Counted from the stretch's first letter, positions 13,127 to 42,291 are shown. The stretch is DNA of 64,000 nt from Macrostomum hystrix (GCA_950097015.1 CATNEN010000029.1:1426001-1490000), one strand, 5' to 3'. Notes: generated by a model not told the origin, from the letters alone. Made by a program: numbers and translations.

Positions 13127-15520
13127 TCAGCCATTGGTCTCGCCGTCCAAGGCCAGGAGGGACGGATCGCTGCTAACTGACGAGTGCAGCATCTCAGAGA
13201 ACAGCTGCGGCATTCTGATAGCCTGTTTATCAAAGTAGGAGGCCCAGAAGCCAAGGCAGAACAGCCGGATTGTATTGATGCGGCCAGACATGGCCAGCAG
13301 GCGAGTGCGCCTGACAGTGTCCGGGCAGACCCGGCGCAGCTCTCTGATGAACCTGGCCTGCAGATTTTCTATTTCTTCCGCATTGTCAAACTGTTGGCCA
13401 GGCGGGCATTGCAGCAGGAATATGGTCTTCAATAGTAGGTACTCCATCCTGGTCACACCCCATTCGGTCAGCAGGCCGGCCGTTAGTCGAACCTGCTGTC
13501 TGGCGCGCATCGCGATGGCATCGCTGAACATGTTCGGCCGGGTGGAGGGCACAGAGACGTTGCCGGCGAAGTGAATAATACCCGAGTATGGCACGGAGTT
13601 CATTGACACCTCGAAGGCGACCAGGCCGGCCCAGTGGGTCTGCAGCAGGCGGATCCGGTCCGGCAGGGAGATCGAGGAGAATCCGGGCAGTCGTTTGGCG
13701 AATTCTACCAGGCGTGCTGAGTGCCGGTCCAGGCACGGCAGCACGATGATGGCGAGGTTTCGCGAATCCACGGAGTTGAAGTCTTCGCCAATGGTGTTCT
13801 CCATGTTGAAGATGGGAAGGTCCAGAGCTTGCAAGGCCTATAGCGGGTGTTAGAGATTGCGCAGGGTGCACAAGCTGAGGCACGGCAGAGAGATAGAAGA
13901 GTGAGAGAGGGAGATGGAGACGGAGAGAGAGGGGGAGATGGAGACGGAGAGAGAGGGAGATGGAGACGGAGAGAGAGGGAGATGGAGACGGAGAGAGAGG
14001 GAGATGGAGACGGAGAGAGAGGGAGATGGAGACGGAGAGAGAGGGGGAGATGGAGACGGAGAGAGAGGGGGAGATGGAGACGGAGAGAGAGGGGGAGATG
14101 GAGACGGAGAGAGAGGGAGATGGAGACGGAGAGAGGGAGATGGAGACGGAGAGAGAGGGAGATGGAGACGGAGAGAGAGGGAGATGGAGACGGAGAGAGA
14201 GGGGGAGATGGAGACGGAGAGAGAGGGGGAGATGGAGACGGAGAGAGAGGGAGATGGAGACGGAGAGAGAGGGGGAGATGGAGACGGAGAGAGAGGGAGA
14301 TGGAGACGGAGATAGAGGGAGATGGAGACGGAGAGAGGGAGATGGAGACGGAGAGAGAGGGAGATGGAGACGGAGAGAGAGGGAGATGGAGACGGAGAGA
14401 GAGGGGGAGATGGAGACGGAGAGAGAGGGGGAGATGGAGACGGAGAGAGAGGGAGATGGAGACGGAGAGAGAGGGGGAGATGGAGACGGAGAGAGAGGGG
14501 GAGATGGAGACGGAGAGAGAGGGGGAGATGGAGACGGAGAGAGAGGGAGATGGAGACGGAGAGAGAGGGAGATGGAGACGGAGAGAGAGGGGGAGATGGA
14601 GACGGAGAGAGAGGGAGATGGAGACGGAGAGAGAGGGAGATGGAGACGGAGAGAGAGGGAGATGGAGACGGAGAGAGAGGGGGAGATGGAGACGGAGAGA
14701 GAGGGAGATGGAGACGGAGATAGAGGGAGATGGAGAGAGAGAGGGAGATGGAGACGGAGAGAGAGGGAGATGGAGACGGAGAGGGGGAGGCAGAGAGGGT
14801 GATGGAGATAAGAGGTAAGAGAGAGGAGAGAACCTCCAATCCCAAGCACCAACGAAATAAACGCAGGCGATTTAGCTCGTAATTAAAGTTATCGCAATTT
14901 TTTTAAAGAGAGTGTGAGAGGTGGAAAAGCAGATGTAGCGATAGTGAGAGGCCAGTTTCATAAAGCTAGCAAACCTCGGTCAGCGTTTCACGGCCGCAGC
15001 TTCCGTCCTCCGGTGAGGGCGGTGACGGGGTTTCGCCGCCTCTACCGCCGCCACGTTTTGCTGAAATCACCGAGGCAACCGAGACAGAGGCGGCAGCCGA
15101 GGCGGACGAGGCAACGGCAGTAGCGGCAGCCCTGGCGGCGGCCCTGGCGGCGGCCCTGGCAGCCGAAGCCTCCGCCCGACGCAGCCGGGGATAACGCTCA
15201 GACTCGGTGCCCGGAGCCACAGTGCGGAGCATACCCGGCCGCATGCCGGACATCAGGCAGCGGCGCCAGCGGCATGCCGGACACTGCTTGCGGCTGGCGT
15301 TGTTGACAGCGCACAGCGGCGGTGGTTGCTGCTGCTGCTGGCCGTCAGCATTGCCAACGCACTGGTAGGTCAAGCAGGAGTGCACTGTTCGCTTAAAGAA
15401 CGCTTTGCAAGCATTGCACGTGGCCGCTCCGTAATGCACCCCGGTGGCTGGGAGGCCGCAGACGGCACAAAAACCAACGGAGGAGACGGACGAGCCACTG
15501 AGAAACTCGAAGTCACTCAT
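13127..15520 (-). CDS. Nuclear receptor paralog A, ERR/NR3B-like, P-box CNACKA (~418 aa)
   Basis: complement(join(13127..13837,14975..15520)) = 1257 nt; phase-0 intron GAG|GTTTGC...TATAG|GCC. C4 zinc fingers CAVC...HYGAATCNACKAFFKR...CPACRWRRC. LBD signature FAKRLPGFSSISLPDRIRLL and AF-2-like QLFSEML. Confidence 0.9.
13900..14800. repeat. Purine-rich 20/22-bp minisatellite (GAGAGGGAGATGGAGACGGA)n filling the NR-A intron
   Basis: Direct reading; units vary in GA/GG length. Confidence 0.95.
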
Positions 15521-15629
15521 TGCTGAATCTCTTTAATCAACTGAAAAATTGACAGCCCGCTAGTGCTTCTGGAAGTGTTCGCGCAGTCTTTCCAAATTTC
15601 GGCTGAAATTCAAGCGAGCTTTTGTCTAT

Positions 15630-16870
15630 GCCATTTCTGTCACTCCATCTGCCTGTATTTCTGTCACTCCATCCGCTTGTATTTCTGTCACTCCATCTGC
15701 CTGTATTTCTGTCACTCCATCCGCCTGCATTTCTGTCACTCCACCTGCCTGTATTTCTGTCACTCCATCCGCCTGCATTTCTGTCACTCCACCTGCCTGT
15801 ATTTCTGTCACTCCATCCGCCTGTATTTCTGTCACTCCATCCGCCTGTATTTCTGTCACTCCATCCGCCCTTATTTCTGTCACTCCATCCGCCTGTATTT
15901 CTGTCACTCCATCTGCCTGCACTTCTGTCACTCCATCCGCCTGTATTTTTGTCACTCCATCTGCCTGCACTTCTGTCACTCCATCCGCCTGTATTTCTGT
16001 CACTCCATCCGCCTGTATTTCTGTCACTCCATCTGCCTGCACTTCTGTCACTCCATCTGCCTGTATTTCTGTCACACCATCTGCCTGTATTTCTGTCACT
16101 CCATCCGCCTGTATTTCTGTCACTCCATCTGCCTGTATTTCTGTCACTCCATCTGCCTGTATTTCTGTCACTCCATCCGCCTGTATTTCTGTCACTCCAT
16201 CTGCCTGTATTTCTGTCACTCCATCCGCCTGTATTTCTGTCACTCCATCCGCCTGTATTTCTGTCACTCCATCCGCCTGCATTTCTGTCACTCCACCTGC
16301 CCGTATTTCTGTCACTCCATCCGCCTGTATTTTTGTCACTCCATCCGCCTGTATTTCTGTCACTCCGTCTGCCTGCACTTCTGTCACTCCATCCGCCTGT
16401 ATTTCTGTCACTCCATCCGCCTGTATTTCTGTCACTCCATCCGCCTGCATTTCTGTCACTCCACCTGCCCGTATTTCTGTCACTCCATCCGCCTGTATTT
16501 CTGTCACTCCATCTGCCTGCACTTCTGGCACTCCATCCGCCTGTATTTCTGTCACTCCATCTGCCTGCACTGCTGTCACTCCATCTGCCTGTATTTTTGT
16601 CACTCCATCCGCCTGTATTTCTGTCACTCCATCCGCCTGTATTTCTGTCACTCCATCTGCCTGCACTGCTGTCACTCCATCTGCCTGTATTTCTGTCACT
16701 CCACCTGCCTGTATTTCTGTCACTCCACCTGCCCGTATTTCTGTCACTCCATCCGCCTGTATTTTTGTCACTCCATCTGCCTGTATTTCTGTCACTCCAT
16801 CTGCCTGCACTTCTGTCACTCCATCCGCCTGTATTTCTGTCACTCCATCCGCCTGTATTTCTGTCACTCC
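15630..16870. repeat. 24-bp minisatellite (TATTTCTGTCACTCCATCCGCCTG)n
   Basis: About 51 units, beginning ~110 bp upstream of the NR-A ATG. Confidence 0.96.
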
Positions 16871-17224
16871 AGTTTTTGTTACTGCCCGCACAATAAATAG
16901 GTAACTAATCACTTAGTGGCTGATCTAACTTTGGTAAAATAATACAAGAAATAGCGCTCTAAAAACACTATTATTAAGTAGAAAAGATTTGCCTGTATGC
17001 AAAGAATTTTACTGACGAATAATAAAGCATAAGTAAAATAGTCTGTCGCAGCATCAGGGGAGTGTTATGCAAATTATACTTTTCCTTTATTGGTTTTGAT
17101 ATACGGAACATCTTATTTATGAATAGGTAAAAATATACATGCATTGTCAGTCTTAAAAGTTTATATGAAACAGATTTGCACAGCAATTCTACTTCAGATC
17201 AAATTTAAAAAATATCTATCAGGA

Positions 17225-17445
17225 TCTGTCACTGTATCTACCCGTGTCACTGAATCGACCTGTGTCACTGAATCTACCTGTGTCACTGAATCTACCTGTG
17301 TCACTGAATCTACCTGTGTCACTGAATCTACCTGTGTCACTGTATCTACCTGTCACTGAATCTACCTGTGTCACTGTATCTACCTGTCACTGAATCGACC
17401 TGTGTCACTGAATCTACCTGTGTCACTGAATCTACCTGTGTCACT
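17225..17445. repeat. 18-bp minisatellite (TGTCACTGAATCTACCTG)n
   Basis: About 12 units read directly. Confidence 0.9.
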
Positions 17446-18316
17446 AAACCCTGTGTCTGTCACGGGTCAGTAACCGTCGAAACGGATGAAAAACAAAAAT
17501 AAAAATAAAATAAAAATGCTTTGTACATGTTTGAATTTCTTGGACGAGCGAAGATAAAAAATCTAACGTTTTTTGCTAGAATTATTAAAATTTAAATTTT
17601 AATATTGAAACTAGGCGTGAATTTATCTAATCAGTGATAGTCAATTTTAGGTCATATTACCATTATATATGTATCTACAGTTGAACATGTAGAAAATATA
17701 AACAATATAAACACAAGAATAAAGTAAACCTATGCTATGCTAATTGAGTAACCTGATTGATAGATAATATCAAGCTAATCGAATGAATTCATTAAAGGAA
17801 AACTACTTTGAGTATGACAAACTTTGCTCAACTAGTCAAGGCGTAAGTTTTAACTAATGTGAAATTATTTAAAAAATCGACACAGCCATGGTTAATTGGG
17901 AAAAAGTAAAATCGGAAACCGAAAGTACAAAAAAATCAAGACGTAAAAAATCTATTTCGAGTAGAAGAAATCACAAAGCACTTACATACAGAAACATATT
18001 AAAGCATCGATGCATTCCGGATATCAATCAACATAACAAACTTCGTGTTCATATTAGACAAGATAGTCTTCCATCCCACGCCAAAATCTAAATTCACTCA
18101 AAGTCCACCCACTCAATGTACTCTCGCTCAACGCCCACCCCACGCCAAATGTACATTCGTTCAGTCTAGCCTACGTGCGATGTACATTAGCTGAACGACC
18201 AACTCATGTCAAGTGTACACTTCCTTAAAGTCTACCCTACCCCTGATGTACATTTGCACCACAACCACAAGACGCTTAAATTTAATCACGCTCATCCTCA
18301 ACCCACGATTGTACTT

Positions 18317-21300
18317 TTAAATTCTCTGCGAAGAAACTGCATGCGGAATTTCATTCAAAGAAAACTGCAGTATCTCAGACATTAGCTGGGGCGGTAGGAA
18401 GGCGTTGCTGCGCACCACAGTCGACCAGAAGCCAACTGAAGCAATCTTCAGCGCCATCAGATTGCTCAGCAGCATGAGCAGACTGCTCCGTCGCAAACTA
18501 TCCGGACAGAGCTGGCGCAGCTCGCGCAGGTAACCGGCTTGAACCTGTTCGATCTGGCCGGAGTCCTGCCACTCATGACCGGCTGGGCATTCCAATAGGA
18601 AGATGGCTTTTAGCAGTAGAAATTCATATCGGGTCACCTGGTTAGGGGTTAGGTAATTTTGATGATGCACTTGAGGTGCACTTGAAAGATATCTATTACG
18701 TTGTGAAATTTCGACTTTGTGAAAGCACCCCTATGTCTCATCCCACCCAGCCCATTTAGTTGTCTGCTCTGTCTGTTCTTTCTCTCCCCCCTCTCCCTAT
18801 GTACGCTTGCTGTTAGTACGTTATCGATTTTTTCTTTGCCTAGTCTTAGCTTTGAATTCTCTATTTGTATGCGCCCCACCCGCGGCTATTTAATCTCCAC
18901 AATTCACCCACCCCAATTAAATGAACATGAGCGGCTATTTAATCTCCACAATTCACCCACCCCAATTAAATGAACATAAGCGGCTATTTAATCTCCACAA
19001 TTCACCCACCCCAATTAAATGAACATGAGCGGCTATTAAATCTCCACAATTCACCCACCCCAATTAAATGAACATGAGCGGCTATTTAATTTCTACAATT
19101 CACCCACCCCAATTAAATGAACATGAGCGGCTATTTAATCTCCACAATTCACCCACCCCAATTAAATGAACATGAGCGGCTATTTAATCTCCACAATTCA
19201 CCCACCCCAATTAAATGAACATGAGCGGCTATTTAATCTCCACAATTCACCCACCCCAATTAAATGAACATGAGCGGCTATTTAATCTCCACAATTCACC
19301 CACCCCAATTAAATGAACATGAGCGGCTATTTAATCTCCACAATTCACCCACCCCAATTAAATGAACATGAGCGACTATTTAATCTCCACAATTCACCCA
19401 CCCCAATTAAATGAACATGAGCGGCTATTTTATCTCCACAATTCACCCACCCCAATTAAATGAACATGAGCGGCTATTTAATCTCCACAATTCACCCACC
19501 CCAATTAAATGAACATGAGCGGCTATTTAATCTCCACAATTCACCCACCCCAATTAAATGAACATGAGCGGCTATTTAATCTCCACAATTCACCCACCCC
19601 AATTAAATGAACATGAGCGGCTATTTAATCTCCACAATTCACCCACTCCAATTAAATGAACATGAGCGGCTATTTAATCTCCACAATTCACCCACCCCAA
19701 TTAAATGAACATGAGCGGCTATTTAATCTCCACAATTCACCCACCCCAATTAAATGAACATGAGCGGCTATTTAATCTCCACAATTCACCCACCCCAATT
19801 AAATGAACATGAGCGGCTATTTAATCTCCACAATTCACCCACCCCAATTAAATGAACATGAGCGGCTATTTAATCTCCACAATTCACCCACTCCAATTAA
19901 ATGAACATGAGCGGCTATTTAATCTCCACAATTCACCCACCCCAATTAAATGAACATGAGCGGCTATTTTATCTCCAAATTCACCCACCCCAATTAAATG
20001 AACATGAGCGGCTATTTTATCTCCACAATTCACCCACCCCAATTAAATGAACATGAGCGGCTATTTAATCTCCACAATTCACCCACCCCAATTAAATGAA
20101 CATGAGCGGCTATTTAATCTCCACAATTCACCCACCCCAATTAAATGAACATGAGCGGCTATTTAATCTCCACAATTCACCCACCCCAATTAAATGAACA
20201 TGAGCGGCTATTTAATCTCCACAATTCACCCACCCCAATTAAATGAACATGAGCGGCTATTTAATCTCCACAATTCACCCACCCCAATTAAATGAACATG
20301 AGCGGCTATTTAATCTCCACAATTCACCCACCCCAATTAAATGAACATGAGCGGCTATTTAATCTCCACAATTCACCCACCCCAATTAAATGAACATGAG
20401 CGGCTATTTAATCTCCACAATTCACCCACCCCAATTAAATGAACATGAGCGGCTACAAGGTCGGCCTACCGTGCATGCTGTTTTAGCTCTCGCCGTGTTA
20501 CCCAAAGACGGTCTCTGACAAAGCGGTTCAAATTTAACAAAAAATTGTTCCAATAAATCACCTGCCACAATGTTAGCCATCTAATCAAGCAGCGTAATTG
20601 TTGGCCAGTTTTTGGCGAGAATATTCCACGAAACTGATGTCCGTAGCTCTCGTCCATGGCCAGGTCGGTGCAAAACACAATATTGCCATTGTAAGGCACC
20701 GAGTTGATCGCCACTTCCAGTGCGCACAGATCAAGGCAGTGCAGCTGCAGCAGCAGCACCTGTGCAATCAGTGCGATCGATTATTGAAGTTGAAATATCA
20801 TAGACTAGGAATTAGAAAGACAGTCAAACCCCTAGAGACACTCGCCTTATCCGGCATGGGCAGCGGGCCAAAGCCGGGCACAGATTTGGCAAACTTGACC
20901 AGATCCCCGATCAGCCGGTCCATGCACAGCGTCAGTGTGTAGGCTAGCCTAACCGGCGTCTCCGCATTGCCTGTAGCCGACACGTCGCTTAATGAGAACG
21001 TCGGCGAGTCAATGGAGATTAGCTGACTGAGCAATGTCAGCGATGAAGATTCCGACGACGAAGTTGGCTGCTGAGGCGGTGGAGGCGGTGGAGGCGGCGG
21101 AAGCATTTCTGTGGAGGCTGATGCTTCCGGTTGACTCTGCGAAGACTGCTGAAAACTGCTTCAATGTGTGAAAAAAGAACATCTGCTGGATATTTTCCGA
21201 AACAGTTGTAGAATAGACCATTAATTTTTATATATTTAAATCAGGGAAATAAGGATCAAAGATATGAGGATCAGGGATCTCAAGAATCAAGGATATAAGG

Positions 21301-23818
21301 ATCAAGGATATGAGGATCAGGGATCTCAAGGATCAGGGATATAAGGATCAAAGATCTGAGGATCAGGGATCTCAAGAATCAAGGATATAAGGATCAAGGA
21401 TATGAGGATCAGGGATCTCAAGGATCAGGGATTTCAAGGATCAGGGATCTCAAGGATCAAGGATATAAGGATCAGGGATATGAGGATCAGGGATATGAGG
21501 ATCAGGGATATGAGGATCAGGGATATGAGGATCAGGGATATGAGGATCAAAGATCTGAGGATCAGGGATATCAAGGATCAAGGATATAAGGATCAAGGAT
21601 ATAAGGATCAAGGATATAAGGATCAGGGATATGAGGATCAGGGATCTCAAGAATCAAGGATATAAGGATCAAGGATATAAGGATCAGGGATATGAGGATC
21701 AAGGATATAAGGATCAAGGATATAAGGATCAGGGATATCAAGGATCAAGGATATAAGGATCAGGGATCTCAAGAATCAAGGATATAAGGATCAAGGATAT
21801 AAGGATCAGGGATATAAGGATCAAGGATATAAGGATCAAGGATATAAGGATCAAGGATATAAGGATCAAGGATATAAGGATCAAGGATATAAGGATCAAG
21901 GATATAAGGATCAGGGATATGAGGATCAGGGATCTCAAGAATCAAGGATATAAGGATCAAGGATATAAGGATCAGGGATATGAGGATCAGGGATCTCAAG
22001 AATCAAGGATATAAGGATCAAGGATATAATGATCAGGGATATGAGGATCAAGGATATAAGGATCAAGGATATAAGGATCAGGGATATCAAGGATCAAGGA
22101 TATAAGGATCAAGGATATAAGGATCAAGGATATAAGGATCAAGGATATAAGGATCAAGGATATAAGGATCAAGGATATAAGGATCAGGGATATGAGGATC
22201 AGGGATCTCAAGAATCAAGGATATAAGGATCAAGGATATAAGGATCAGGGATATGAGGATCAGGGATCTCAAGAATCAAGGATATAAGGATCAGGGATAT
22301 GAGGATCAGGGATCTCAAGAATCAAGGATATAAGGATCAAGGATATAAGGATCAGGGATATGAGGATCAGGGATATGAGGATCAGGGATCTCAAGGATCA
22401 GGGATTTCAAGGATCAGGGATCTCAAGGATCAAGGATATAAGGATCAAAGATCTGAGGATCAGGGATCTCAAGAATCAAGGATATAAGGATCAGGGATTT
22501 GAGGATCAGGGATCTCAAGGATCAGGGATTTCAAGGATCAGGGATCTCAAGGATCAAGGATATAAGTATCAGGGATATGAGGATCTGGGATCTCAATATT
22601 CAGGAATCTCAATATTCAGGGATCTCAAGGATCAGGGATCTCAAGGATCTGGGATCTCAAGGATCTGGGATCTCAAGGATCAGGGATTTCAGTGATCAGG
22701 GATGTCAAAAATCAGGGATCTCAATCCTTATATCATTAACCTCAATCCTTATATCCTTATATCATGGATATAAGGATCAGTGATCTGAGGATCAGGGATC
22801 TAAGGTTCATGGATCTGAGGATCAGGGATCTGAGGATCATGGATCTGAGGATCAGGGATCTGAGGATCTTGGATCTGAGGATCATGGATCTGAGGATCAT
22901 GGATCTGAGGATCATGGATCTGAGGATCATGGATCTGAGGATCATGGATCTAAGGATCAAGGATCTGAGGATCATGGATCTGAGTATCTAAGAAACAGAG
23001 AATCAGGGATCTGAGGAGCAGGTTTCTGAGTATCTAAGAAACAGAGAATCAGGGATCATAGATCATGGATCTGAGGATCAAGGATCTGAGGATCATTGAT
23101 CTGAGGATCAGGGATCTGAGGATCATGGATCTGAGGATCTAAGAAACTGAGAATCAGGGATCTAGGGATCAGGGATCTGAAGATCAGGGATCTGAGGATC
23201 AAGGATCTGAGGATTAGGGATCTGAGGATCATGGATCTGAGGATTAGGATCTGAAGATCAGGGATCTGAGGATCAGGGATCTGAGGATTAGGGATCTGAA
23301 GATCAGGGATCCGAGGATCATGGATCTGAGGATCTAAGAAGCAGAGAATCGGGGATTTGAGGAGCAGGTATCTGAGTATCGAGCATCACCTACCCCTGAG
23401 CAGCAGTCTCTTGCTGCCGCAGCCTCGGATATCGACTGCTCTCAGTGCCGGCCTCCACGCTGCGCAGCATGCCAGGCTGCATGTTGGCCCGCACACAGCG
23501 CCGCCACCGGCAGGCCGGGCACTGCTTTCTGTTGGGCTCCCGCACTGGGCAAAGTTCGTCGGCTCCAGAATAGCGCCTGGCGCATTGGTAGGTCAGGCAG
23601 GAGTGCACGGTGCGCTTAAAGAACGTCTTGCACGCGTTGCACGTGGCGGCGCCGTAGTGAACGCCGGTGGCGCGCAGGTCGCACACAGAGCAGCCACCCA
23701 GGATGTCAATGATTGGACGCTCCTGCTGCTGCTGCTGCTGATTCTGCTGCTGATGATTAGCAGAAGCCGACGCATCGGCATCAATAACTATAGCCGTGTC
23801 CTTTGTCTGTCCTGCCAG
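18317..23818 (-). CDS. Nuclear receptor paralog B, ERR/NR3B-like, P-box CNACKT (~417 aa plus an initiator Met; no in-frame ATG in the first visible exon)
   Basis: complement(join(18317..18637,20562..20759,20846..21155,23394..23818)); intron phases 2/0/0 are consistent, and the middle intron is GC-AG. DBD CSVC...CNACKTFFKR; LBD FAKSVPGFGPLPMPDK|VLLLQLH; C-terminal QLMSEIL. The exon opens at acceptor TTGCAG|CTG. Confidence 0.85.
18880..20456. repeat. 49-bp minisatellite in NR-B intron 3, ~32 highly homogeneous copies
   Basis: Unit AATCTCCACAATTCACCCACCCCAATTAAATGAACATGAGCGGCTATTT; period 49 checked at 18901/18950. Confidence 0.97.
21245..23375. repeat. 7/14-bp-based AGGATCA/AGGATAT satellite filling NR-B intron 1
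   Basis: About 2.1 kb of TAAGGATCAAGGATA / TGAGGATCAGGGATC variants. Confidence 0.95.
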
Positions 23819-23929
23819 CTGCAACCATAATAAATGAAAAGTTAAACTCTGCTGTTATTAGAAACATAAGTAAGTGTTTAAAACCTAAAAGTAAATTTTT
23901 AACACTACATCTGGAATCATGTAGGCCAT

Positions 23930-25350
23930 CTTAATCAGCCTACTTTGAGTAGCTAATCTCAACAAGCCTGTTCTGAGTAGCTAATCTCAACCAGCCTGCT
24001 TTGAGTAGCTAATCTCAACCAGCCTGTTCTGAGTAGCTAATCTCAAGCAGCCTACTTTGAGTAGCCAATCTCAAGCAGCCTGTTTTGAGTAGCTAATCTC
24101 AACCAGCCTACTTTGAGTAGCTAATCTCAACAAGCCTGTTCTGAGTAGCTAATCTCAACCAGCCTGCTTTGAGTAGCTAATCTCAACAAGCCTGTTCTGA
24201 GTAGCTAATCTCAACCAGCCTGCTTTGAGTAGCTAATCTCAACCAGCCTGCTTTGAGTAGCTAATCTCAACCAGCCTGTTCTGAGTAGCTAATCTCAAGC
24301 AGCCTACTTTGAGTAGCTAATCTCAAGCAGCCTACTTTGAGTAGCTAATCTCAAGCAGCCTACTTTGAGTAGCCAATCTCAAGCAGCCTACTTTGAGTAG
24401 CCAATCTCAAGCAGCCTGTTTTGAGTAGCTAATTTCAAACAGCCTGTTTTGAGTAGCTAATCTCAACCAGCCTACTTTGACTAGCTAATCTCAACCAGCC
24501 TACTTTGAGTAGCTAATCTCAACCAGCCTACTTTGAGTAGCTAATCTCAAGCAGCCTACTTTGAGTAGCCAATCTCAAGCAGCCTGTTTTGAGTAGCCAA
24601 TCTCAAGCAGCCTACTTTGAGTAGCTAATTTCAAACAACCTGTTTTGAGTAGCTAATCTCAAGCAGCCTACTTTGAGTAGCTAATCTCAAGCAGCCTACT
24701 TTGAGTAGCTAATCTCAAGCAGCCTACTTTGAGTAGCCAATCTCAAGCAGCCTACTTTGAGTAGCCAATCTCAAGCAGCCTGTTTTGAGTAGCTAATTTC
24801 AAACAGCCTGTTTTGAGTAGCTAATCTCAACCAGCCTACTTTGACTAGCTAATCTCAACCAGCCTACTTTGAGTAGCTAATCTCAACCAGCCTACTTTGA
24901 GTAGCTAATCTCAACCAGCCTACTTTGAGTAGCTAATCTCAAGCAGCCTACTTTGAGTAGCCAATCTCAAGCAGCCTGTTTTGAGTAGCCAATCTCAAGC
25001 AGCCTACTTTGAGTAGCCAATCTCAAGCAGCCTGTTTTGAGTAGCTAATTTCAAACAACCTGTTTTGAGTAGCTAATCTCAAGCAGCCTACTTTGAGTAG
25101 CTAATCTCAAGCAGCCTACTTTGAGTAGCCAATCTCAAGCAGCCTGTTTTGAGTAGCTAATTTCAAACAGCCTGTTTTGAGTAGCTAATCTCAACCAGCC
25201 TACTTTGACTAGCTAATCTCAACCAGCCTACTTTGAGTAGCTAATCTCAAGCAGCCTACTTTGAGTAGCTAATCTCAACCAGCCTACTTTAAGTAGCCAA
25301 TCTCAAGCAGCCTGTTTTGAGTAGCTAATCTCAACCAGCCGATTCTGAGC
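23930..25350. repeat. 28-bp near-palindromic satellite with 364-bp (13-mer) higher-order repeat
   Basis: Unit TGAGTAGCTAATCTCAACCAGCCTACTT. The variant block AATTTCAAACAG...TTGACTAG recurs at 24431, 24795 and 25159. Confidence 0.95.
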
Positions 25351-26319
25351 ACCTAAAGATAGTTTAGAGTAGTTGTCACGAAGAAACAGATTTAAAAAGA
25401 AATAAGCAAAGCCAGTTCAATCTGTGGAGACTGACTATAACAAAATAAAGAATGCAGTTAATTAAATTTCTCATTTTCTAGTAAACACAAGCAGTGCTGG
25501 TATCTTTCAAAACAAAAAAGTTTAAATGAAATTACAACAAAAAACGAAAAATGACAGGTAAACGAATCTAATACAAAAACTCAAATAACAACTGGGGGCA
25601 CATTTAACGGATACTTCAAATTGAATACTTAACTGCGGTCAGTTGAAAACTGTTGCTGGTTTTCTGATAATATTGGATTGTGTTTTGTCAATAAAATATC
25701 AACAGTTAAAACTGACTACTCTACTAAGCAGTAGTAAGTAACGCGCATTTTAACATATATCTTGGGAAAGAAGGGGCGCTTGTTGCGAACAAATTCAAAG
25801 AACAATTCAAATAATGAATAAAACCTATCTGTCTACTTGAAAAGAAATTTCAGTTATTCATCTATTATTAAATAAAGAGTCTTAGAAAAAACTCAGTAAC
25901 ATGATATTTTACTCTAAGATTGTAAGCAGGCAATTTAGTTTAAAACAGTAATCTGACTCACAAAGTAAAACTTCAACTTAAAATTAATCAACTTAAAGTG
26001 CAGCTGAAAAATAGCAAGTAGACATTAAACTGAATACATTGATCCAAAGCAATTGTGCACAAAATAGTGCAAAAACGCAAGTTAATAAACTAGACAAATG
26101 ACATATCAACAAAAACTTCCACAAGTACTATAAAGAATTGCTAGTCCATATTCGTCGCATGTTAGCTACTCATAGTGACTAAGTAGTATATAACTGCAAC
26201 TTTCTTATTTAAAAAGAAATTTTTTTATACAACATCATTGATAAAATATGCTCAGGGTACTCGCAAAATATATTTTCTTTTAGAACAAATTCAGATAAAA
26301 AAATTCTGAAAACCTAAAA

Positions 26320-27262
26320 GAGTGAATGACCAACTGAATGAACCATTGAATTGGACTGAATGACCAACTGAATGAACCATTGAATTGGAGTGAATGACCA
26401 ACTGAATGATACATTGAATTGGACTGAATGACCAACTGAATGAACCATTGAATTGGACTGAATGACATACTGAATGATACATTGAATTGGACTGAATGAC
26501 CAACTGAATGAACCATTGAATTGGAGTGAATGACCAACTGAATGAACCATTGAATTGGACTGAATGACCAACTGAATGAACCATTGAATTGGACTGAATG
26601 AGCAACTGAATGAACCATTGAATTGGACTGAATGACCAACTGAATGAACCATTGAATTGGAGTGAATGACCAACTGAATGAACCATTGAATTGGACTGAA
26701 TGACATACTGAATGATACATTGAATTGGACTGAATGACCAACTGAATGAACCATTGAATTGGAGTGAATGACCAACTGAATGAACCATTGAATTGGACTG
26801 AATGACCAACTGAATGAACCATTGAATTGGACTGAATGAGCAACTGAATGAACCATTGAATTGGACTGAATGACCAACTGAATGAACCATTGAATTGGAG
26901 TGAATGACCAACTGAATGAACCATTGAATTGGACTGAATGACCAACTGAATGAACCATTGAATTGGACTGAATGACCAACTGAATGAACCATTGAATTGG
27001 ACTGAATGACCAACTGAATGAACCATTGAATTGGACTGAATGAGCAACTGAATGAACCATTGAATTGGACTGAATGACCAACTGAATGAACCATTGAATT
27101 GGAGTGAATGACCAACTGAATGAACCATTGAATTGGACTGAATGACCAACTGAATGAACCATTGAATTGGAGTGAATGACCAACTGAATGAACCATTGAA
27201 TTGGACTGAATGACCAACTGAATGAACCATTGAATTGGACTGAATGACTAACTGAATGAACC
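26320..27262. repeat. 34-bp minisatellite (TGAATGACCAACTGAATGAACCATTGAATTGGAC)n
   Basis: About 27 units; period checked at 26881/26915. Confidence 0.96.
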
Positions 27263-27345
27263 GGATAATTGTAATGATCGAGTTATATGCTTGTATTAAT
27301 ATGTTTCTGGTATCCATAACGACAGACTGCGCATCACGCAGGTGT

Positions 27346-30300
27346 TCAATACTCGGAGGTAGCGGCCGCGCTCTGTAGGGTGGCCAAATCTGAGGATATC
27401 CGGGGCACCTGGCCTAGAGAAAATGTCAGCATCTCGGACATCAGCGGCGGGGGCAAGAAGGTTGTCCGCTGCATCACTCGAGACCAATAGCCAACGTAGA
27501 ACACTTGGATAGCCGAGAGCATGCCGCTAAGCGAGAGCAGCTTGCCCCGCCTGGCATTGTCCGGACAGATGGCGCGCAGCTCCCTGAGGTAGGTGGCCTG
27601 GGCGGCCTGGATCAGATCTGGCCGGCGCCATTCTTCCAAAGGCGGAGCGGCGTCGAATAAGAACACGAGCTTCAATAGGAGAAACTCCGCCCAGGTCAGG
27701 CCGGTGGCGGTCAGGACGCGGGCCAGGCAGCGCATCTGGCTGCCGCAGCGGACTGGGATGAGGCCGGCCACGCTAGACGACTGGCGGGGGTCATTCAGTC
27801 AGTTAGTAAACAGTTTCTTTATATTTGCGCATTTCTACTTTGATGAGTAGGATAGTGCGCGAAATTTGCCAAAAAATAATTTTCTGTCATGCTTTATTCA
27901 TTTTTCTGAAATGTTCGACCCCATCACACAGTGACCCCGCTTCTGCCTACGGGGGGCCGGGTCGCACCTGCAGAATTCGAACTCCAGACCTGTGCAGAAA
28001 TATATGAGACAGGGAGAAGTGGATGACGCAGATGTGGGACAAAGGCAGACAGAAGGGCAGAGAAGACAGAGAAGACAGAAGGTCAAAGGAAAATACGAGC
28101 TCGTACTGATCAAAGCTGGGAAGAAATCACGAAGACGCCGCCAATTGGCCAAATCTGGCCGGGGTCTCTTTGGCGGCAGGTGTTTGCGCAGGCCAATTAT
28201 TTAAATCGGTGCAATTTTCACCTTCCACCTGGTACCAGGGAGCTTGTCGAAATCAACTACAAAGCAACGATTGTTCCTTTTGGAATTTTCATACAAGCCT
28301 GGCTAGTTACCGAAAAATGTGATCCATTTTCCAGTGTCACTGCCTGCCTCGTGCAGTCACCAGCTATTCACATATCTTTTAGCAGCTTAACTTCCAACAC
28401 CGACCCAGGCTTTAGTTATCAAACCAATTAATTCCATTATCCAATTATCTAGATCCCACCATTTCACTCTCTAGTTGCCATCCGATTCCATTTCATCCTT
28501 TAGTTTCCATCCCATTCCATCCTCTAGTTCCCATCCCATTTCATCCTCTAGTTCCCATCTCATCCCATCCACTGGTTCCCATCCCATTCCATCCACTAGT
28601 TCCCATCCCATCCACTGGTTCCCATCCCATTCCATCCACTAGTTCCCATCCCATCCACTGGTTCCCATCTCATCCTATCCACTGGTTCCCATTCCATTCC
28701 ATCCTCTAGTTCCCATCCCATTCCATCCACTAGTTCCCATCCCATCCACTGGTTCCCATCCCATTCCATCCACTAGTTCCCATCCCATCCACTAGTTCCT
28801 ATCCCATTCCATCCACTAGTTTTCATTTCATACCTTCCTCTAGCTCCCATTTATTTTCTTCCTCTCGTTCCGATCCCTTCCTCTTCCAGAAAATTCTATT
28901 TAAGCGCCGCAATCAGCTGTGTACACTGAGCCGCAGTCAGCTGTGTACACTGAGCCGCAGTTATCTGTGTACACTGAGCGCAGTCAGCTGTGTACACTGA
29001 GCCGCAGTTATCTGTGTACACTGAGCCGCAGTTATCTGTGTACACTGAGCCGCAGTTATCTGTGTACACTGAGCCGCAGTTATCTGTGTACACTGAGCCG
29101 CAGTTATCTGTGTACACTGAGCCGCAGTTATCTGTGTACACTGAGCCGCAGTTATCTGTGTACACTGAGACGCAGTTATCTGTGTACACTGAGCCGCAGT
29201 TATCTGTGTACACTGAGCCGCAGTTATCTGTGTACACTGAGCCGCAGTCAGCTGTGTACACTGAGCCGCAGTCAGCTGTGTACACTGAGCCGCAGTTATC
29301 TGTGTACACTGAGCCGCAGTTATCTGTGTACACTGAGCCGCAGTCGGCTGTGTACACTGAGCGCAGTCAGCTGTGTACACTGAGCCGCAGTTATCTGTGT
29401 ACACTGAGCCGCAGTTATCTGTGTACACTGAGCCGCAGTCAGCTGTGCACACTGTGCTTACCTGGTCCTCGCGTATGGCATAGCTGGCCGAGAATTTCAG
29501 ACTGCCATCGTAGGGCATGGAGTTGTAGGCCACGCGCCACACTGTGAGGCTGAGCCAGTGCAGCTGCAGCAGCCGGACCCGGTCCTCCATTGGCAGCTGG
29601 GTAAAGTCGGACAGTCGCTTAGAGAAGTCGATGAGATCTACGGCAAGTTTGTTAGTAGCTGCGCCAAGTTGAGCAGTGTGCTCATCCAGCTGGCTAGGCG
29701 AAGATGAAGCGGCCTGTAGCTGCTCGGCAGTTGCCTGCCTTAACTGCTGATGCAGCGGATCGTCCGGGGCGCAGCTGTTGAATAGCTCCGTCAGCTGGCA
29801 GACCAGGGCGCTGCGTTCCGACGCCAGATGGTCGCCGGGTATTGGCCGTTGTGCAGTCAGCTGGCGCATGAAGGCCGGAGGTTCGCGCCCCACTGGCAGG
29901 CTGGCCGCGCCAGATTTAACAGCTGGAGACGCCGACGAAGACGAAACGCCAGCGCCGGCGGAAGCTTGAACGTCAGCCGAAGGGCTGTCATCGGCTGTGT
30001 CGTTGTCGCTGATGTCTTCAATCACCCGGCCGCCGCCGGCGCCAATTGTCGGCGCAGTTGTCGGCGGTGTCGGAGTCTGGCTAGGTGAGGAGCAGCGGAC
30101 CAGAGCGGTCTGCATGCGGGCCTCCAGGCAGCGCACCCAGCGACAAGCCGGGCAGTGGCGCTTCCGGCCGGTTCTCGGCACGGGGCAGCGGGCGCCAGAC
30201 CGAAGCACCGGGCAGAAGTAGGTCACGCAGGAGTGCACAGTGCGCTTAAAGAAGGCTTTGCAAGCTTCGCAGGTGATTGCGCCGTAGTGATGCCCGGTTG

Positions 30301-30382
30301 CTTTGCGAAAGCAGACGGTGCATGGCTCGTTAAGAAGCTTTTGCTCTAATTGCTGCTGCTGTTGCTGCTGATCTTGGTGCAT
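27346..30382 (-). CDS. Nuclear receptor paralog C, ERR/NR3B-like, P-box CEACKA (~451 aa)
   Basis: complement(join(27346..27780,29462..30382)) = 1356 nt; phase-0 intron CAG|GTAAGC...CGCCAG|TCG. CEACKAFFKR is the ERR-type P-box. LBD: FSKRLSDFTQLPMEDRVRLL, YNSMPYDGSLKFSASYAIRED (resembles ERR SLPxDDKLxxAEDY) and PLMSEML. Confidence 0.9.
28480..28830. repeat. Degenerate pyrimidine-rich CCATCC/CTAGTT repeat (NR-C intron)
   Basis: Direct reading. Confidence 0.8.
28915..29452. repeat. 24-bp minisatellite (TGTGTACACTGAGCCGCAGTTATC)n next to the NR-C donor
   Basis: About 22 units; the array starts within ~10 nt of the 5' splice site. Confidence 0.95.
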
Positions 30383-30564
30383 TTGTAAAAGAAATCTGAA
30401 GAAGAATTGTAGCAGGTGAAAATTATTTCTAAAATGAGTTTTCTTAGAAAGATTAAAAGGAAGTCAGAAAACCGATTTATAAATCTAGTTAGTCTGGCAG
30501 GGCATTTTCAGCTCTATTCCTCTCCCTCTACTCAGCGTCACACGATACTGATACGGCTAAAGAC

Positions 30565-30700
30565 GCAGTCTGATTGGTTGACGAGGGCGGGGACACGAGA
30601 AAAACTGTAATAAGGAGAGAATCGAGCCGGATCAGGCGGGCGGTTCGGATTTGACGGGCTTCTCCAGCTGTAGGGAGGAGGCGGAGGGGCGCAGGATATT
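30565..30700 (-). promoter_or_regulatory. Candidate promoter upstream of the nuclear receptor cluster
   Basis: CCAATCA on the minus strand (TGATTGG 30571-30577), GC box GGGCGGGG (30585-30592) and further GC-rich motifs ~190-310 bp upstream of the NR-C ATG. Motif evidence only. Confidence 0.4.
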
Positions 30701-33750: not shown

Positions 33751-34076
33751 ACAAAAGAGTGAAGTTGAAAAGGGTTCATTAATTACGAATAACAATTAAT
33801 GGCCAATAGAATAGCAATAGCTGCAAGGCACACAAACCAATAAATAGATTGAGCTTCCGTCATGATCAAATAAAAAAGGCAGGGAATGTTTCTGTGGCAA
33901 CTATAAATTAAAACAAGAAAGTGTTGTAAAAATGAATAAAAACTGAAGTTATTAATAAAGTCAGTGTGGAAAATAAACCATTTTGTATCTGCGAGTCACC
34001 TAAATATTTTTAGTTTAGTCTCGCCTATCCTGAGCACCAAAGCAATTTCACAATTGTAGAGCGAAGCTGCTCAAAA

Positions 34077-40000: not shown

Positions 40001-42291
40001 GGTGGGATTATCAACGAATGGAAACCTTATCAGGGTGGGATTATCAACGAATGGAAACCTTATCAGGGTGGGATTATCAACGAATGGAAACCTTATCAGG
40101 GTGGGATTATTAACGAATGGAAACCTTATCAGGGTGGGATTATTAACGAATGGAAACCTTATCAGGGTGGGATTATCAACGAATGGAAACCTTATCAGGG
40201 TGGGATTATCAACGAATGGAAACCTTATCAGGGTGGGATTATCAACGAATGGAAACCTTATCAGGGTGGGATTATCAACGAATGGAAACCTTATCAGGGT
40301 GGGATTATCAACGAATGGGACTCTTTTTGGGGTGGGATTATCAACGAATGGAAACCTTATCAGGGTGGGATTATCAACGAATGGAAACCTTATCAGGGTG
40401 GGATTATCAACGAATGGGACTCTTTTTGGGGTGGGATTATCAACGAATGGAAACCTTATCAGGGTGGGATTATTAACGAATGGAAACCTTATCAGGGTGG
40501 GATTATCAACGAATGGAAACCTTATCAGGGTGGGATTATCAACGAATGGAAACCTTATCAGGGTGGGATTATCAACGAATGGGACTCTTTGGGGTAGGAT
40601 TATCAACGAATGGAAACCCTTATCAGGGTGGGATTCTCAACAAATGGAAACCTTAATCGGGGTGGGATTATCAACGAATGGAAACCTTATCACGGTGGGA
40701 TTATCAACGAATGGAAACCTTAATCGGGGTGGGATTCTCAACAAATGGAAACCTTAATCGGGGTGGGATTATCAACGAATGTAGTTATTATCCGGGTGGG
40801 ATTATACACGAGTGAAAAAAAATAAAAAAACGTGGGAAGACTATCGAGAGTGGAATTATAAAGAAAGTTATTTTCACATGTCATAAAGAATTTAGATATA
40901 CCTTAATTCCTGATTTAGGTAAACCAGACTTGTCTGCTGATAGTAGTATGTATGGAATATAAAAATAATTAGCTAACACCTAAAAAATATACATGGAGGT
41001 CACTATAAAAAGTCAAATGATGTCGGAAGTATGCAAAGCATAGTCTTTCCCTGTTAGCTAGCGCTTTACTTATGTATTTGTATACATTGTCAGAGAATAG
41101 AATATGAAGTATTTTTTCCTCTAAAATTGCACCTGCGTCTTGCTTTACAACCTTGCGAAATATATGAGATTATTTCCTATTAAAAGATCCTCAAAAATAG
41201 AAAGCATTAAAATCTACTGTGTTCTTTCAATCCGAACTCACCCGTATCTGTACAGGCCCTCCTCCATTCGCTTCTGCGTGAGCACATCCTCATAGTGGAC
41301 TCCGGCGCCGTCTCTACGCCAGTCCCTGTGCGTGGCCTCTTTATCAAGCTTGCCGCGCAGGAATTCGTTGTATTCCCGGTTGCGCTCGGCGCGTTTCAAA
41401 GCGGCGGCGCGTTCGCGATCATCCATCAGAGGCAGGGAGGTGCTCTCCGGCTCTGAGCCCACGGGGATGCCGCGCGGGCTGTAGTGGCCTGGATTGAGTT
41501 CGGGTTCGGCAGCGCAAATGCGCGAAGGAATGCAGAACAGAAACTGGGCTGCAAGAAAGACAGTGAAGAGTAAGCAGTAGGGAGAAGGCTGAGGGTGGAC
41601 GGCTGATGGTAGAAGGCTGATGGTAGAAGGCTGATGGTAGAAGGCTGATGGTAGAAGGCTGATGGTAGAAGGCTGATGGTAGAAGGCTGATGGTAGAAGG
41701 CGGAGGCTAGAAGGAAGTGAGGGGAGAAGGCAGTGAGGAGAAGGCAGTGAGGAGAAGGCAGTGAGGAGAAGGCAGTGAGGAGAAGGCAGTGAGGAGAAGG
41801 CAGTGAAAAGAAGGCAGTGAGGAGAAGGCAGTGAGGAGAAGGCAGTGAGGAGAAGGCAGTGAGGAGAACGCAGTGAGGAGAAGGCAGTGAGGAGAAGGCA
41901 GTGGGGAGAAGGCAGTGGGGAGAAGGCAGTGAGGAGAAGGCAGTGGGGAGAAGGCAGTGAGGAGAAGGCAGTGGGGAGAAGGCAGTGAGGAGAACGCAGT
42001 GAGGAGAAGGCAGTGGGGAGAAGGCAGTTAGGAGAAGGTAGTGAGGAGAAGGCAGTGAGAAGAGGTTAGTGGCAGCTCAGCTAGCACAGGAAGTACGGCA
42101 GTCTGAGCAGGCAGACTCACCAGGCGCCTCAGGCAGGGCCAAAGGCCCCAACTGCTGCGATTGGGGAGGTGGGGGAGCCTGCAATGCGGGTCTGTCCACC
42201 GCTCCGCCGTTGTAGGGCCCTTGCTGCTGGCGCAACTGCGTCACCTGCCGCTCCAACTCGTCCAGAGTGGGATCCGATGCTGGAGGCGGAG

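What the first reader, a model, noticed from the sequence alone, without database searches (positions are those of the whole stretch)
15500..30700. Possible operon resolved by spliced-leader trans-splicing, with NR-B borrowing the leader AUG
Seen: NR-B's first exon opens at a phase-0 acceptor (TTGCAG|CTG, 23818) with no in-frame ATG before the zinc fingers. NR-A (ATTCAG|CAATG) and NR-C (TTCTTCAG 13 nt before ATG) also have acceptor-like AGs just upstream of the start. A and B each have only ~110 bp of unique DNA before a satellite array, and CCAAT/GC-box motifs were noticed only upstream of C. Established: flatworm spliced leaders end in AUG, which can initiate translation in frame. Inference: one promoter drives C-B-A, and the leader supplies Met1 of NR-B.
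Basis: partly seen in the sequence, partly recalled or inferred. Interest (0 to 1): 0.72.

Follow-up and report, generated by a model that had tools for sequence, protein, structure and literature searches.

The report
Spliced leader starts nuclear receptor B
In this Macrostomum flatworm the middle gene of three tandem nuclear-receptor genes has no start codon of its own and almost certainly takes it from the AUG at the end of the trans-spliced leader, a mechanism known in flatworms since 2006. The further idea that all three genes are one operon remains unproven.

Summary
On the minus strand, downstream of a CSPP1-like gene, lie three ERR-like nuclear-receptor paralogues, C, B and A. NR-B exon 1 (23818-23394) opens right after TTGCAG. 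An in-frame TAA lies 13 codons upstream, and there is no in-frame ATG before the zinc fingers.

Evidence that the leader supplies Met1:
- Transcript contigs from four runs (two organisms, two studies) match the exon and stop matching at the acceptor and at the GT donor.
- Three of those contigs carry the same 23 foreign letters on the 5' side. I could not read the letters.
- The first ten codons differ from M. lignano only by five synonymous changes.
- All four M. lignano NR-B copies are annotated 5'-partial, starting at that Leu (or the next codon).
- The RNA-seq-polished M. lignano assembly has leader letters (up to CAATTTTATTGCATG) written in just before that codon.

I put leader-donated Met1 at about 0.85-0.9.

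The operon is not shown.
- After removing tandem repeats the spacers are about 1.17 kb, against a roughly 100-bp mode and a 1-kb limit in M. lignano.
- A's trans-splicing is untested.
- M. lignano transcription-unit names are mixed.
- In favour: only C has a promoter-like block conserved between the species.

Other agents of this scan found the same leader-AUG habit at other genes of this genome. This is a new member of a known kind.

The parts
34076..41491 (-). CSPP1-like gene upstream of the cluster on the same strand (last coding exon ends at 34076)
   Evidence: blastn blocks of 75-85% identity, collinear with the CSPP1_C gene that precedes NR-C in M. lignano L001 and L004
30476..30577 (-). 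Promoter-like block of NR-C: CCAAT (30577-30573), CGTGTGACGC (TGACGC at 30540-30535), TAGATTTA/TATAAA (30481-30476)
   Evidence: Same motifs in the same order and spacing in M. lignano (CCAAT at -182 vs -179, TGACGC at -145 vs -158 from the acceptor). The surrounding 300 nt is 50-58% GC.
30396..30397 (-). Candidate trans-splice acceptor of NR-C (cttcag|, exon from 30395, 13 nt before the ATG)
   Evidence: Fits [T/C]TNCAG. The orthologous M. lignano site, 12 nt before the ATG, carries leader letters in copy L001 and a native AG in L002 and L004. No RNA of this species was examined here.
29474..30382 (-). NR-C exon 1 (ATG at 30382; DBD, hinge and start of LBD; donor CAG|GTAAGC)
   Evidence: ORF and Pfam zf-C4; 76% identity to M. 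lignano P0001 in the MAFFT alignment, 69% by BLASTP in the search
27346..27780 (-). NR-C exon 2 (acceptor ccgccag|TCG; stop at 27348-27346)
   Evidence: Reading frame and the junction REDQ|SSSVAGLIPVRC match P0001 REDQ|ASSVAGLIPVRC
26323..27262 (.). 34-nt satellite (27.6 copies) in the C-B spacer
   Evidence: TRF. Each minus-strand unit holds CAATG|GTTCAT, the only conceivable cis source of an in-frame ATG, and it is a weak donor.
25341..26322 (-). Unique AT-rich part of the C-B spacer (25-34% GC)
   Evidence: No block conserved with the M. lignano spacers beyond chance
23928..25340 (.). 28-nt satellite (50 copies), starting 109 nt upstream of NR-B's acceptor
   Evidence: TRF
23819..23927 (-). 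Last 109 nt of NR-B's outron. Branch-point-like GTTTAAC about 30 nt before the junction; acceptor TTGCAG with AG at 23820-23819.
   Evidence: No transcript contig covers 23820-23927. TTTAACTTT is shared with M. lignano at the same distance. The site fits the motif [T/C]TNCAG.
23394..23818 (-). NR-B exon 1: Leu2 onward, CAG-repeat poly-Gln, both zinc fingers; 425 nt, ends in phase 2
   Evidence: Contigs X2, X3 and X4 match 23394-23819 with no difference, then continue unlike the genome on both sides. Pfam zf-C4. Frame check.
20846..21155 (-). NR-B exon 2. The acceptor at 21155 is probable, 21134 is possible. Donor is GC (AAG|GCGAGT).
   Evidence: Phase arithmetic. M. lignano proteins read PMQDK|VLLLQ. 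Contig lengths fit.
20562..20759 (-). NR-B exon 3
   Evidence: cacag|GTG ... TGGCAG|GTGATT, 66 codons; aligns to the M. lignano B proteins
18317..18637 (-). NR-B exon 4, coding part (stop at 18319-18317)
   Evidence: aaccag|GTG ACC; Pfam Hormone_recep
18281..18286 (-). ATTAAA, probable poly(A) signal of NR-B
   Evidence: Lies 31-36 nt after the stop. The contigs run 26-74 nt past the stop under the exon model.
15633..16871 (.). 24-nt satellite (52 copies), starting 110 nt upstream of NR-A's proximal AG
   Evidence: TRF
15523..15542 (-). Two candidate acceptors of NR-A: tttttcag| (15541|15540) and attcag| (15523|15522)
   Evidence: Sequence. Only the distal one fits [T/C]TNCAG. No RNA evidence.
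15071..15520 (-). NR-A exon 1 (own ATG at 15520; DBD). The donor is uncertain: TCG|GTGATT at 15071, or GAG|GTTTGC further on.
   Evidence: ORF, Pfam zf-C4
13127..13837 (-). NR-A exon 2 (LBD; acceptor ctatag|GCC; stop at 13129-13127)
   Evidence: ORF, Pfam Hormone_recep, in-frame TAG directly before the exon

Best explanation
The region holds three tandem ERR-like nuclear-receptor paralogues on the minus strand, in the order C, B, A, downstream of a CSPP1-like gene. This order is shared with Macrostomum lignano.

NR-B is transcribed from somewhere upstream of 23927. Its 5' part (the outron) is removed at the acceptor TTGCAG| (23820-23819). The roughly 35-nt spliced leader of the genus, which ends in ...TTGCAUG, is joined to CUG at 23818. 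The leader's terminal AUG is then the only in-frame AUG ahead of the DNA-binding domain and serves as Met1 (predicted M-L-A-G-Q-T-K-D...). The product is about 418 residues from four exons.

Shown:
- the gene structure at exon 1;
- the absence of a genomic start codon;
- processed transcripts that stop matching the genome exactly at the acceptor;
- coding constraint right up to the junction;
- leader joining at the orthologous junction in M. lignano.

Inferred:
- that the foreign 5' letters in this species are the leader;
- that translation starts at its AUG.

NR-C very probably has its own promoter (CCAAT, TGACGC and TATA-like, conserved across species) and is itself trans-spliced 13 nt before its ATG. 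Whether B and A are fed by read-through from C or by their own promoters in the AT-rich, satellite-filled spacers is open.
For: 1. There is no in-frame ATG between the TAA at 23857-23855 and the zinc fingers. The internal ATGs come only at codons 113 and 117.

2. Contigs of three runs of one study (1352, 1304 and 1339 nt) match 23394-23819 with no differences, and one contig of another organism and study matches 23559-23819. None runs on into genomic sequence at either end, so they come from spliced RNA. The three long contigs each have exactly 23 further letters on the 5' side, and 855-903 on the 3' side. The 3' lengths fit exons 2-4 (829 nt) plus a short 3'UTR. The base before CTG in the RNA is G, as in AUG. 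A constant 23+1 foreign letters is what a 31-mer graph gives when a contig runs into a sequence shared by thousands of transcripts. This is my own inference.

3. Codons 2-11 (LAGQTKDTAI) are identical in M. lignano, with five synonymous and no replacement changes. The alignment collapses upstream of the junction.

4. All four M. lignano NR-B proteins are annotated 5'-partial and begin LAGQTKD or AGQTKD. That annotation cuts genes at RNA-seq trans-splice sites.

5. The Mlig_3_7 assembly was polished with RNA-seq. Directly before B's CTG the four copies read ...ttttttttACATG...tttttttGCATG, and twice ...CAATTTTATTGCATG. The last is the leader's 3' end plus one T (leader sequence from PMC8629364).

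6. At C's junction one M. lignano copy reads TTGCATG where two otherwise identical copies read TCGAAAG.

7. TTGCATG occurs exactly once per M. lignano locus, each time at an NR gene's 5' boundary.

8. The site fits the published trans-splice motif [T/C]TNCAG.

9. Macrostomum leaders end in ATG (PMC10468722). Use of the leader AUG as initiator is established in Schistosoma (Cheng et al. 2006, cited in PMC9851317).
Against: - The 23 foreign 5' letters were not displayed, because the loose-end table was flooded by unrelated CAG-repeat contigs. The leader itself has therefore not been read in this species at this gene.
- The runs are not on record as RNA. Their transcript origin is inferred from splicing.
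- There is no evidence on translation (no ribosome profiling and no N-terminal peptide).
- The polishing-artefact reading of the M. lignano ATG is an inference from the published methods and from differences between copies. It has not been checked against DNA reads.
Confidence: 0.85

Rival explanations
1. One promoter upstream of NR-C drives a C-B-A polycistronic precursor, and spliced-leader trans-splicing resolves it into three mRNAs. This rival is compatible with the best explanation and adds to it.
For: - Same strand and same order in both species.
- B, and by orthology C, are trans-spliced.
- Only C's upstream flank has a conserved CCAAT/TGACGC/TATA-like, GC-rich block. The C-B and B-A spacers are 25-34% GC and share nothing with M. 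lignano beyond chance.
- Repeats are known to inflate operon spacers in M. lignano (PMC8629364).
- On M. lignano contig NIVC01000086.1 the C gene carries the same transcription-unit name as B (Mlig002286 g3 and g4).
- An older gene model fuses B's 3' part to A (P0006).
Against: - After removing tandem repeats the spacers are 1174 nt (C stop to B acceptor) and about 1165 nt (B stop to A acceptor). The mode in M. lignano is about 100 bp with a 1-kb cut-off, and the limit used for parasitic flatworms is 300 bp.
- M. lignano C-B spacers have about 1.57 kb of unique sequence.
- At three of four M. lignano loci, C (Mlig015060, Mlig030915) and B (Mlig002286) have different unit names.
- M. lignano has ATTGG plus TGACGT at 251 and 234 nt before B's junction, a possible promoter of B's own.
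- About 60% of trans-spliced M. lignano genes are not in operons.
- A's trans-splicing is untested in either species.
- No precursor RNA was seen here.
Confidence: 0.27
2. NR-B's start codon comes from a cis-spliced upstream exon in 23819-27345, for example the CAATG|GTTCAT present in each unit of the 34-nt satellite, and not from the leader.
For: - The foreign 5' letters were not read.
- A repeated exon would also break a 31-mer graph at a fixed length.
- Each satellite unit offers an ATG followed by GT, in phase and ending in G.
Against: - A scan for in-frame ATGs within 24 nt of a G|GTR donor in the whole spacer finds no such donor; its one hit is a G|GC site at 23927.
- GTT donors are rare. 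The top M. lignano donor motif is GT[G/A]AG.
- The satellite is species-specific, whereas the junction and its leader joining are shared with M. lignano, whose satellites differ.
- Such an mRNA would start inside or upstream of C's 3' region.
Confidence: 0.06
3. The ATG before CTG in M. lignano is real genomic sequence. The two species then differ by a 1-nt change (ATG versus AG) that swaps a genome-encoded start for a leader-donated one.
For: - All four M. lignano copies have CATG|CTG.
- MAFFT places a single-base gap at the T.
Against: - Leader-bearing reads can only arise at that junction if an AG acceptor exists there, and the CAATTTTATTGCATG in two copies can only come from such reads.
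- The assembly was polished with RNA-seq.
- C's junction shows the same conversion in one copy of three whose flanks are otherwise identical.
- The annotation treats all four copies as lacking a start.
- A 7-8-nt T run directly before (G/A)CA(T)G looks like a polypyrimidine tract.
Confidence: 0.08
4. NR-B is a decaying duplicate, or makes only a protein without the DNA-binding domain, starting at Met113 or at a near-cognate codon.
For: - No genomic ATG.
- Near-cognate TTG and CTG lie at the junction.
Against: - The frame is open through four exons.
- Spliced transcripts were assembled in four runs.
- The DBD is conserved at 83% DNA identity with M. lignano, and the N-terminal differences are all synonymous.
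- Pfam scores are intact.
Confidence: 0.03

Closest known systems
Schistosoma mansoni mRNAs that need the leader's 3'-terminal AUG as initiator (Cheng et al. 2006, J Biol Chem 281:733; summarised in PMC9851317)
   Same: The leader ends in AUG. The acceptor sits in phase 0 directly before codon 2. There is no usable genomic start codon.
   Different: This is a free-living macrostomid and the gene is a nuclear receptor. The evidence is assembly contigs and orthology, not cDNA clones or translation assays.
Macrostomum lignano NR-B orthologues Mlig002286 g1, g2, g4 and g5 (PAA60703.1, PAA60439.1, PAA91460.1, PAA91417.1)
   Same: Same gene, same neighbours (CSPP1-like, C, B, A), same intron phase after exon 1, same GC donor after exon 2. 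The annotated coding sequence starts at the same Leu or the next codon.
   Different: Exons are about 80% identical in DNA and the satellites are entirely different. The M. lignano assembly shows ATG where the window has AG, most likely because leader letters were polished in.
Macrostomum lignano operons as defined by Ustyantsev and Berezikov 2021 (PMC8629364)
   Same: Co-oriented neighbours, a trans-spliced downstream gene, spacers swollen by repeats.
   Different: The repeat-adjusted spacers (about 1.17 kb) lie above their 1-kb limit and far above the 100-bp mode. No precursor RNA is shown. The members would be paralogues.
Caenorhabditis elegans SL2-type operons
   Same: The idea of a polycistronic precursor resolved by trans-splicing.
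   Different: Macrostomum has no specialised second leader. The C. elegans intercistronic distance is about 100 nt. The C. elegans leader does not donate a start codon.
Other leader-AUG genes found by this scan in the same genome (CHMP6, NF-YB, OTUD6, LTV1, thimet-like peptidase)
   Same: The same habit: no genomic ATG, an acceptor in phase, transcript contigs ending at the acceptor with a foreign 5' tag.
   Different: Those are conserved housekeeping genes. This one is a lineage-expanded transcription factor inside a tandem triplet.

Membership tests
Flatworm genes whose initiator AUG is donated by the spliced leader | The organism's leader ends in AUG | tested here: inconclusive
   Shown in the literature for M. 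lignano, M. cliftonense and M. hystrix. Earlier notes of this scan report it for this genome. I did not read the leader of this species myself.
Flatworm genes whose initiator AUG is donated by the spliced leader | A 3' splice site directly before the first genomic codon, in phase 0 | tested here: met
   TTGCAG|CTG at 23819|23818. AUG+CUG reads MLAGQTKD through the DBD.
Flatworm genes whose initiator AUG is donated by the spliced leader | No in-frame genomic AUG that could give the functional protein | tested here: met
   In-frame TAA 13 codons upstream with no ATG between. The first internal ATG is codon 113, after the zinc fingers.
Flatworm genes whose initiator AUG is donated by the spliced leader | The leader is physically joined at that site in mature mRNA | tested here: inconclusive
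   Contigs of four runs end their genomic match at 23819 and carry 23 (three runs) or 13 foreign letters, which were not displayed. In M. lignano the leader's 3' end is polished into the assembly at the orthologous junction.
Flatworm genes whose initiator AUG is donated by the spliced leader | Translation starts at the leader AUG | not testable with these tools
   Indirect only: codons 2-11 are under purifying selection, with 5 synonymous and 0 replacement changes.
Operon resolved by spliced-leader trans-splicing | Adjacent genes on one strand with nothing on the other strand between them | tested here: met
   C, B and A are all on the minus strand. The spacers hold only satellites and AT-rich DNA.
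Operon resolved by spliced-leader trans-splicing | Short intercistronic distance (under 1 kb repeat-adjusted in M. lignano, mode about 100 bp; 300 bp or less in parasitic flatworms) | tested here: not met
   1174 and about 1165 nt after removing tandem repeats; 3527 and 2793 nt raw (thresholds).
Operon resolved by spliced-leader trans-splicing | Downstream genes are trans-spliced | tested here: inconclusive
   B is very probably trans-spliced. For A there is no RNA evidence, and there are no leader traces at A in M. lignano.
Operon resolved by spliced-leader trans-splicing | A polycistronic precursor RNA exists | not tested
M. lignano unit names join C and B at one locus of four.
Nuclear receptor superfamily | C4 zinc-finger DBD followed by a ligand-binding domain | tested here: met
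   PF00105 with E 6e-20 to 2e-17 in A, B and C. PF00104 in A (1e-13), C (2e-5) and B (2e-4, just under the cut-off).

The most novel reading that the evidence does not exclude
Three paralogous nuclear-receptor genes are co-transcribed from the single conserved promoter upstream of NR-C, as an operon with kilobase-scale, satellite-filled intercistronic spacers. Trans-splicing both resolves the precursor and supplies the middle gene's start codon. Tandem duplicates would then stay co-regulated without each needing its own promoter.
Probability: 0.25. Interest if true: 0.55.

Novelty: new member of a known kind. Interest (0 to 1): 0.36.

Why it matters
- For annotation: a gene caller that demands a genomic ATG will truncate NR-B or drop its DNA-binding domain. 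The M. lignano orthologues are indeed all deposited as partial.
- For biology: expression of the full receptor depends on trans-splicing, so trans-splicing gates whether the DNA-binding form can be made.
- A practical by-product: the widely used, RNA-seq-polished Mlig_3_7 assembly appears to carry leader letters written over true splice acceptors. That creates spurious genomic ATGs and destroys AG sites. It could affect acceptor-motif statistics and any comparison of start codons between species.
- The operon question bears on how tandem duplicates are regulated in a genome where satellites swell the spacers, but it is still open.

Tried and rejected
1. Reading the 5' tag. The stretch I laid included B's CAG repeat (23719-23757). 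That repeat drew hundreds of unrelated contigs and pushed the junction's loose end out of the table.

2. Fetching the same contigs through proteins. I ran three word searches: C exon 1, its DBD region, and an alignment of all exon pieces kept as separate rows. They returned only M. lignano proteins and distant ERR-like proteins, and none of this species.

4. The large HMMER search was not used. The family is clear, and same-species fragments would be hidden inside 50% clusters.

5. blastn and shared 9-mers between the spacers of the two species gave nothing beyond chance.

6. Rfam on the whole window gave no hit. A leader 16-mer with up to 3 mismatches gave no hit, so there is no leader gene and there are no leader traces in the window.

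7. Supplement and full-text look-ups for Mlig002286 and Mlig015060 found nothing.

8. I first read the M. lignano ATG as a real start-codon difference between species. I rejected this after finding graded leader letters across four copies and the RNA-seq polishing step.

9. One script line used A's acceptor one base off and printed a false in-frame reading. Corrected by hand, leader AUG + CAA UGA is a two-codon upstream frame.

Full report
**What is there.** The window is from a Macrostomum-type flatworm. Three nuclear-receptor genes lie on the minus strand, each with a C4 zinc-finger domain and a ligand-binding domain.

| Gene | Exons (window coordinates, minus strand) |
|---|---|
| NR-C | 30382-29474, 27780-27346 |
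| NR-B | 23818-23394, 21155-20846, 20759-20562, 18637-18317 |
| NR-A | 15520-about 15071, 13837-13127 |

These models rest. Introns and spacers are filled with unrelated minisatellites. A CSPP1-like gene ends at 34076 on the same strand. M. lignano has the same order (CSPP1-like, C, B, A) in four assembled copies, L001 to L004.

**The observation.**
- NR-B's first coding exon begins right after ttgcag. The in-frame codons upstream reach a TAA after 13 codons without an ATG. The first in-frame ATGs inside the exon are codons 113 and 117, beyond both zinc fingers.
- The 109-nt (B) and 110-nt (A) unique stretches before satellites are real.
- A and C have AG sites 2 and 13 nt before their ATGs.
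- By the published trans-splice motif [T/C]TNCAG, B (TTGCAG) and C (CTTCAG) fit. A site 18 nt further up (TTTTCAG, junction 15541|15540) does.

**RNA evidence in this species.** One search for runs and one laying of contigs were allowed.
- Four runs hold the exon.
- Three runs of one study gave contigs of 1352, 1304 and 1339 nt that match 23394-23819 without a single difference. A contig from another organism and study matches 23559-23819 with one base change and a 9-nt gap, probably in the CAG repeat.
- None continues into genomic sequence at either end. At the 3' side the match stops at G|GTAGGT. At the 5' side it stops at the acceptor. The contigs are therefore processed transcripts, although the runs are not on record as RNA.
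- The parts beyond the donor (903, 855 and 890 nt) fit exons 2-4 (829 nt) plus 26-74 nt of 3'UTR. An ATTAAA lies 31-36 nt after the stop.
- On the 5' side all three long contigs have exactly 23 more letters, and the base before CUG is G.
- My inference: constant 5' lengths beside varying 3' lengths are what a 31-mer assembly graph produces when a transcript runs into a sequence shared by thousands of others. About 7 exon letters are needed for uniqueness, which leaves 24 leader letters.
- The letters themselves were not shown, because the exon's CAG repeat attracted many unrelated contigs that filled the loose-end table. This is the main gap in the evidence.

**Evidence from M. lignano.**
- The first ten codons after the junction are identical in protein, with five synonymous differences. 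Upstream of the junction the alignment falls apart. The reading frame is therefore used right up to the acceptor.
- All four M. lignano NR-B proteins are deposited as 5'-partial and begin LAGQTKD or AGQTKD. That annotation sets gene boundaries from leader-bearing RNA-seq reads.
- At first sight the M. lignano genome has an ATG exactly where the window has AG. But the four copies read ...ttttttttACATG...tttttttGCATG and, twice...CAATTTTATTGCATG before CTG. The published leader ends ...CTCAATTTATTGCATG.
- At NR-C's junction one copy reads TTGCATG where two copies, identical in all of the other 128 aligned positions, read TCGAAAG, a native AG acceptor.
- TTGCATG occurs exactly once per locus, on either strand, always at one of these two boundaries.
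- The methods of the genome paper state that the assembly was polished with Pilon using RNA-seq as well as DNA reads.
- The simplest reading is that leader-bearing reads overwrote the true acceptors. This has two consequences. M. lignano NR-B and NR-C mRNAs do carry the leader at these junctions. The genomic ATG of M. lignano NR-B is probably an artefact, so the ATG-less state is shared by both species.

**How it most likely works.** The outron is cut at 23820-23819. The leader, ending in AUG, is joined to CUG. The ribosome starts at the leader's AUG and makes a receptor of about 418 residues. This is the mechanism shown in Schistosoma by Cheng et al. 2006 (cited in PMC9851317). Other agents of this scan reported it for several other genes of this genome. 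I put it at about 0.85-0.9 for NR-B.

For the other two genes the leader AUG would be out of frame.
- In A it gives AUG CAA UGA from the proximal site, or an eight-codon frame from the distal site. Both end on the UGA that overlaps A's own AUG.
- In C it opens a 22-codon upstream frame.
- In M. lignano C it is in frame, 12 nt before the ATG (corrected by hand).

**The operon.**

In favour:
- The genes are co-oriented, and this is conserved.
- B, and by orthology C, are trans-spliced.
- Only C's flank has a GC-rich block with CCAAT, CGTGTGACGC and a TATA-like element in the same order and spacing in both species.
- The spacers are AT-rich and show nothing conserved.
- On one M. lignano contig C shares B's transcription-unit name.
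- An older gene model fuses B to A.

Against:
- With tandem repeats removed the spacers are still 1174 and about 1165 nt. The mode in M. lignano operons is about 100 bp with a 1-kb limit, and the limit used for parasitic flatworms is 300 bp.
- At three of four M. lignano loci C and B have different unit names.
- M. lignano has an inverted CCAAT and a TGACGT 251 and 234 nt before B's junction.
- Most trans-spliced genes in that species are not in operons.
- Nothing is known about A's 5' end.

I put the full C-B-A operon at about 0.25-0.3. Failing the spacer criterion lowers membership in the operon class as currently defined. It does not exclude co-transcription.

**Verdict.** The leader-donated start of NR-B is well supported and is a new example of a known mechanism. 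The operon is an open hypothesis. The leader letters in the M. lignano reference are a useful technical by-product.

Noticed in passing
L001:9982-9988; L002:9991-9997; L003:7403-7417; L004:9983-9997: The RNA-seq-polished M. lignano assembly Mlig_3_7 carries letters of the spliced leader's 3' end, written over the trans-splice acceptors of NR-C (one copy of three) and NR-B (four of four, to different extents). This creates apparent genomic ATGs.
   Followed up: yes
window 30476-30577 (minus strand): A promoter-like block upstream of NR-C (CCAAT, CGTGTGACGC, TAGATTTA/TATAAA) is kept in order and spacing in M. lignano, although the surrounding DNA no longer aligns.
   Followed up: partly
window 20844-20845 (minus strand): NR-B intron 2 appears to be a GC-AG intron (AAG|GCGAGT). 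The M. lignano proteins, which read PMQDK|VLLLQ, imply the same donor.
   Followed up: partly
window 15123-15479 versus L002:21535-22361: NR-A's DNA-binding domain is one uninterrupted exon in the window. In M. lignano it is split by an intron filled with a (TCTG)n microsatellite, so an intron was gained or lost between the two species.
   Followed up: partly
window 16988-17005 (minus strand) versus L002:21446-21466: TTTGCATACAGGCAAA, upstream of the 24-nt satellite before NR-A, resembles CTTGCAGCTACAGGCAAAGG, which lies about 30-50 nt before NR-A's ATG in M. lignano. It may be a displaced leader exon or acceptor, with the satellite sitting in a 5' intron. A 10-mer match of this kind is also expected by chance.
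   Followed up: no
window 23928-25340 versus L001:14440-14480: The unit of the 28-nt satellite upstream of NR-B (variant ATTGGCTACTCAAAGTAGGC) resembles the single-copy M. lignano segment ATTGGCTTCTTAGAAAGTGACGTAG at the same distance (-251) from B's junction. The satellite may have grown from that local sequence.
   Followed up: no
window 23719-23757: The CAG repeat (poly-Gln) in NR-B's N-terminal region draws hundreds of unrelated transcript contigs when reads are laid on it. The contig of the second organism also carries a 9-nt gap over 23559-23819, probably a length difference in this repeat.
   Followed up: partly
L003:3153-4006: The M. lignano NR-C copy on contig NIVC01000086.1 has a frameshift in exon 1, seen as two overlapping ORFs. 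This is why only its last 153 residues are annotated.
   Followed up: partly
window 34076-41491 (minus strand): A CSPP1-like gene with satellite-filled introns lies directly upstream of the receptor triplet, in conserved synteny with M. lignano.
   Followed up: partly
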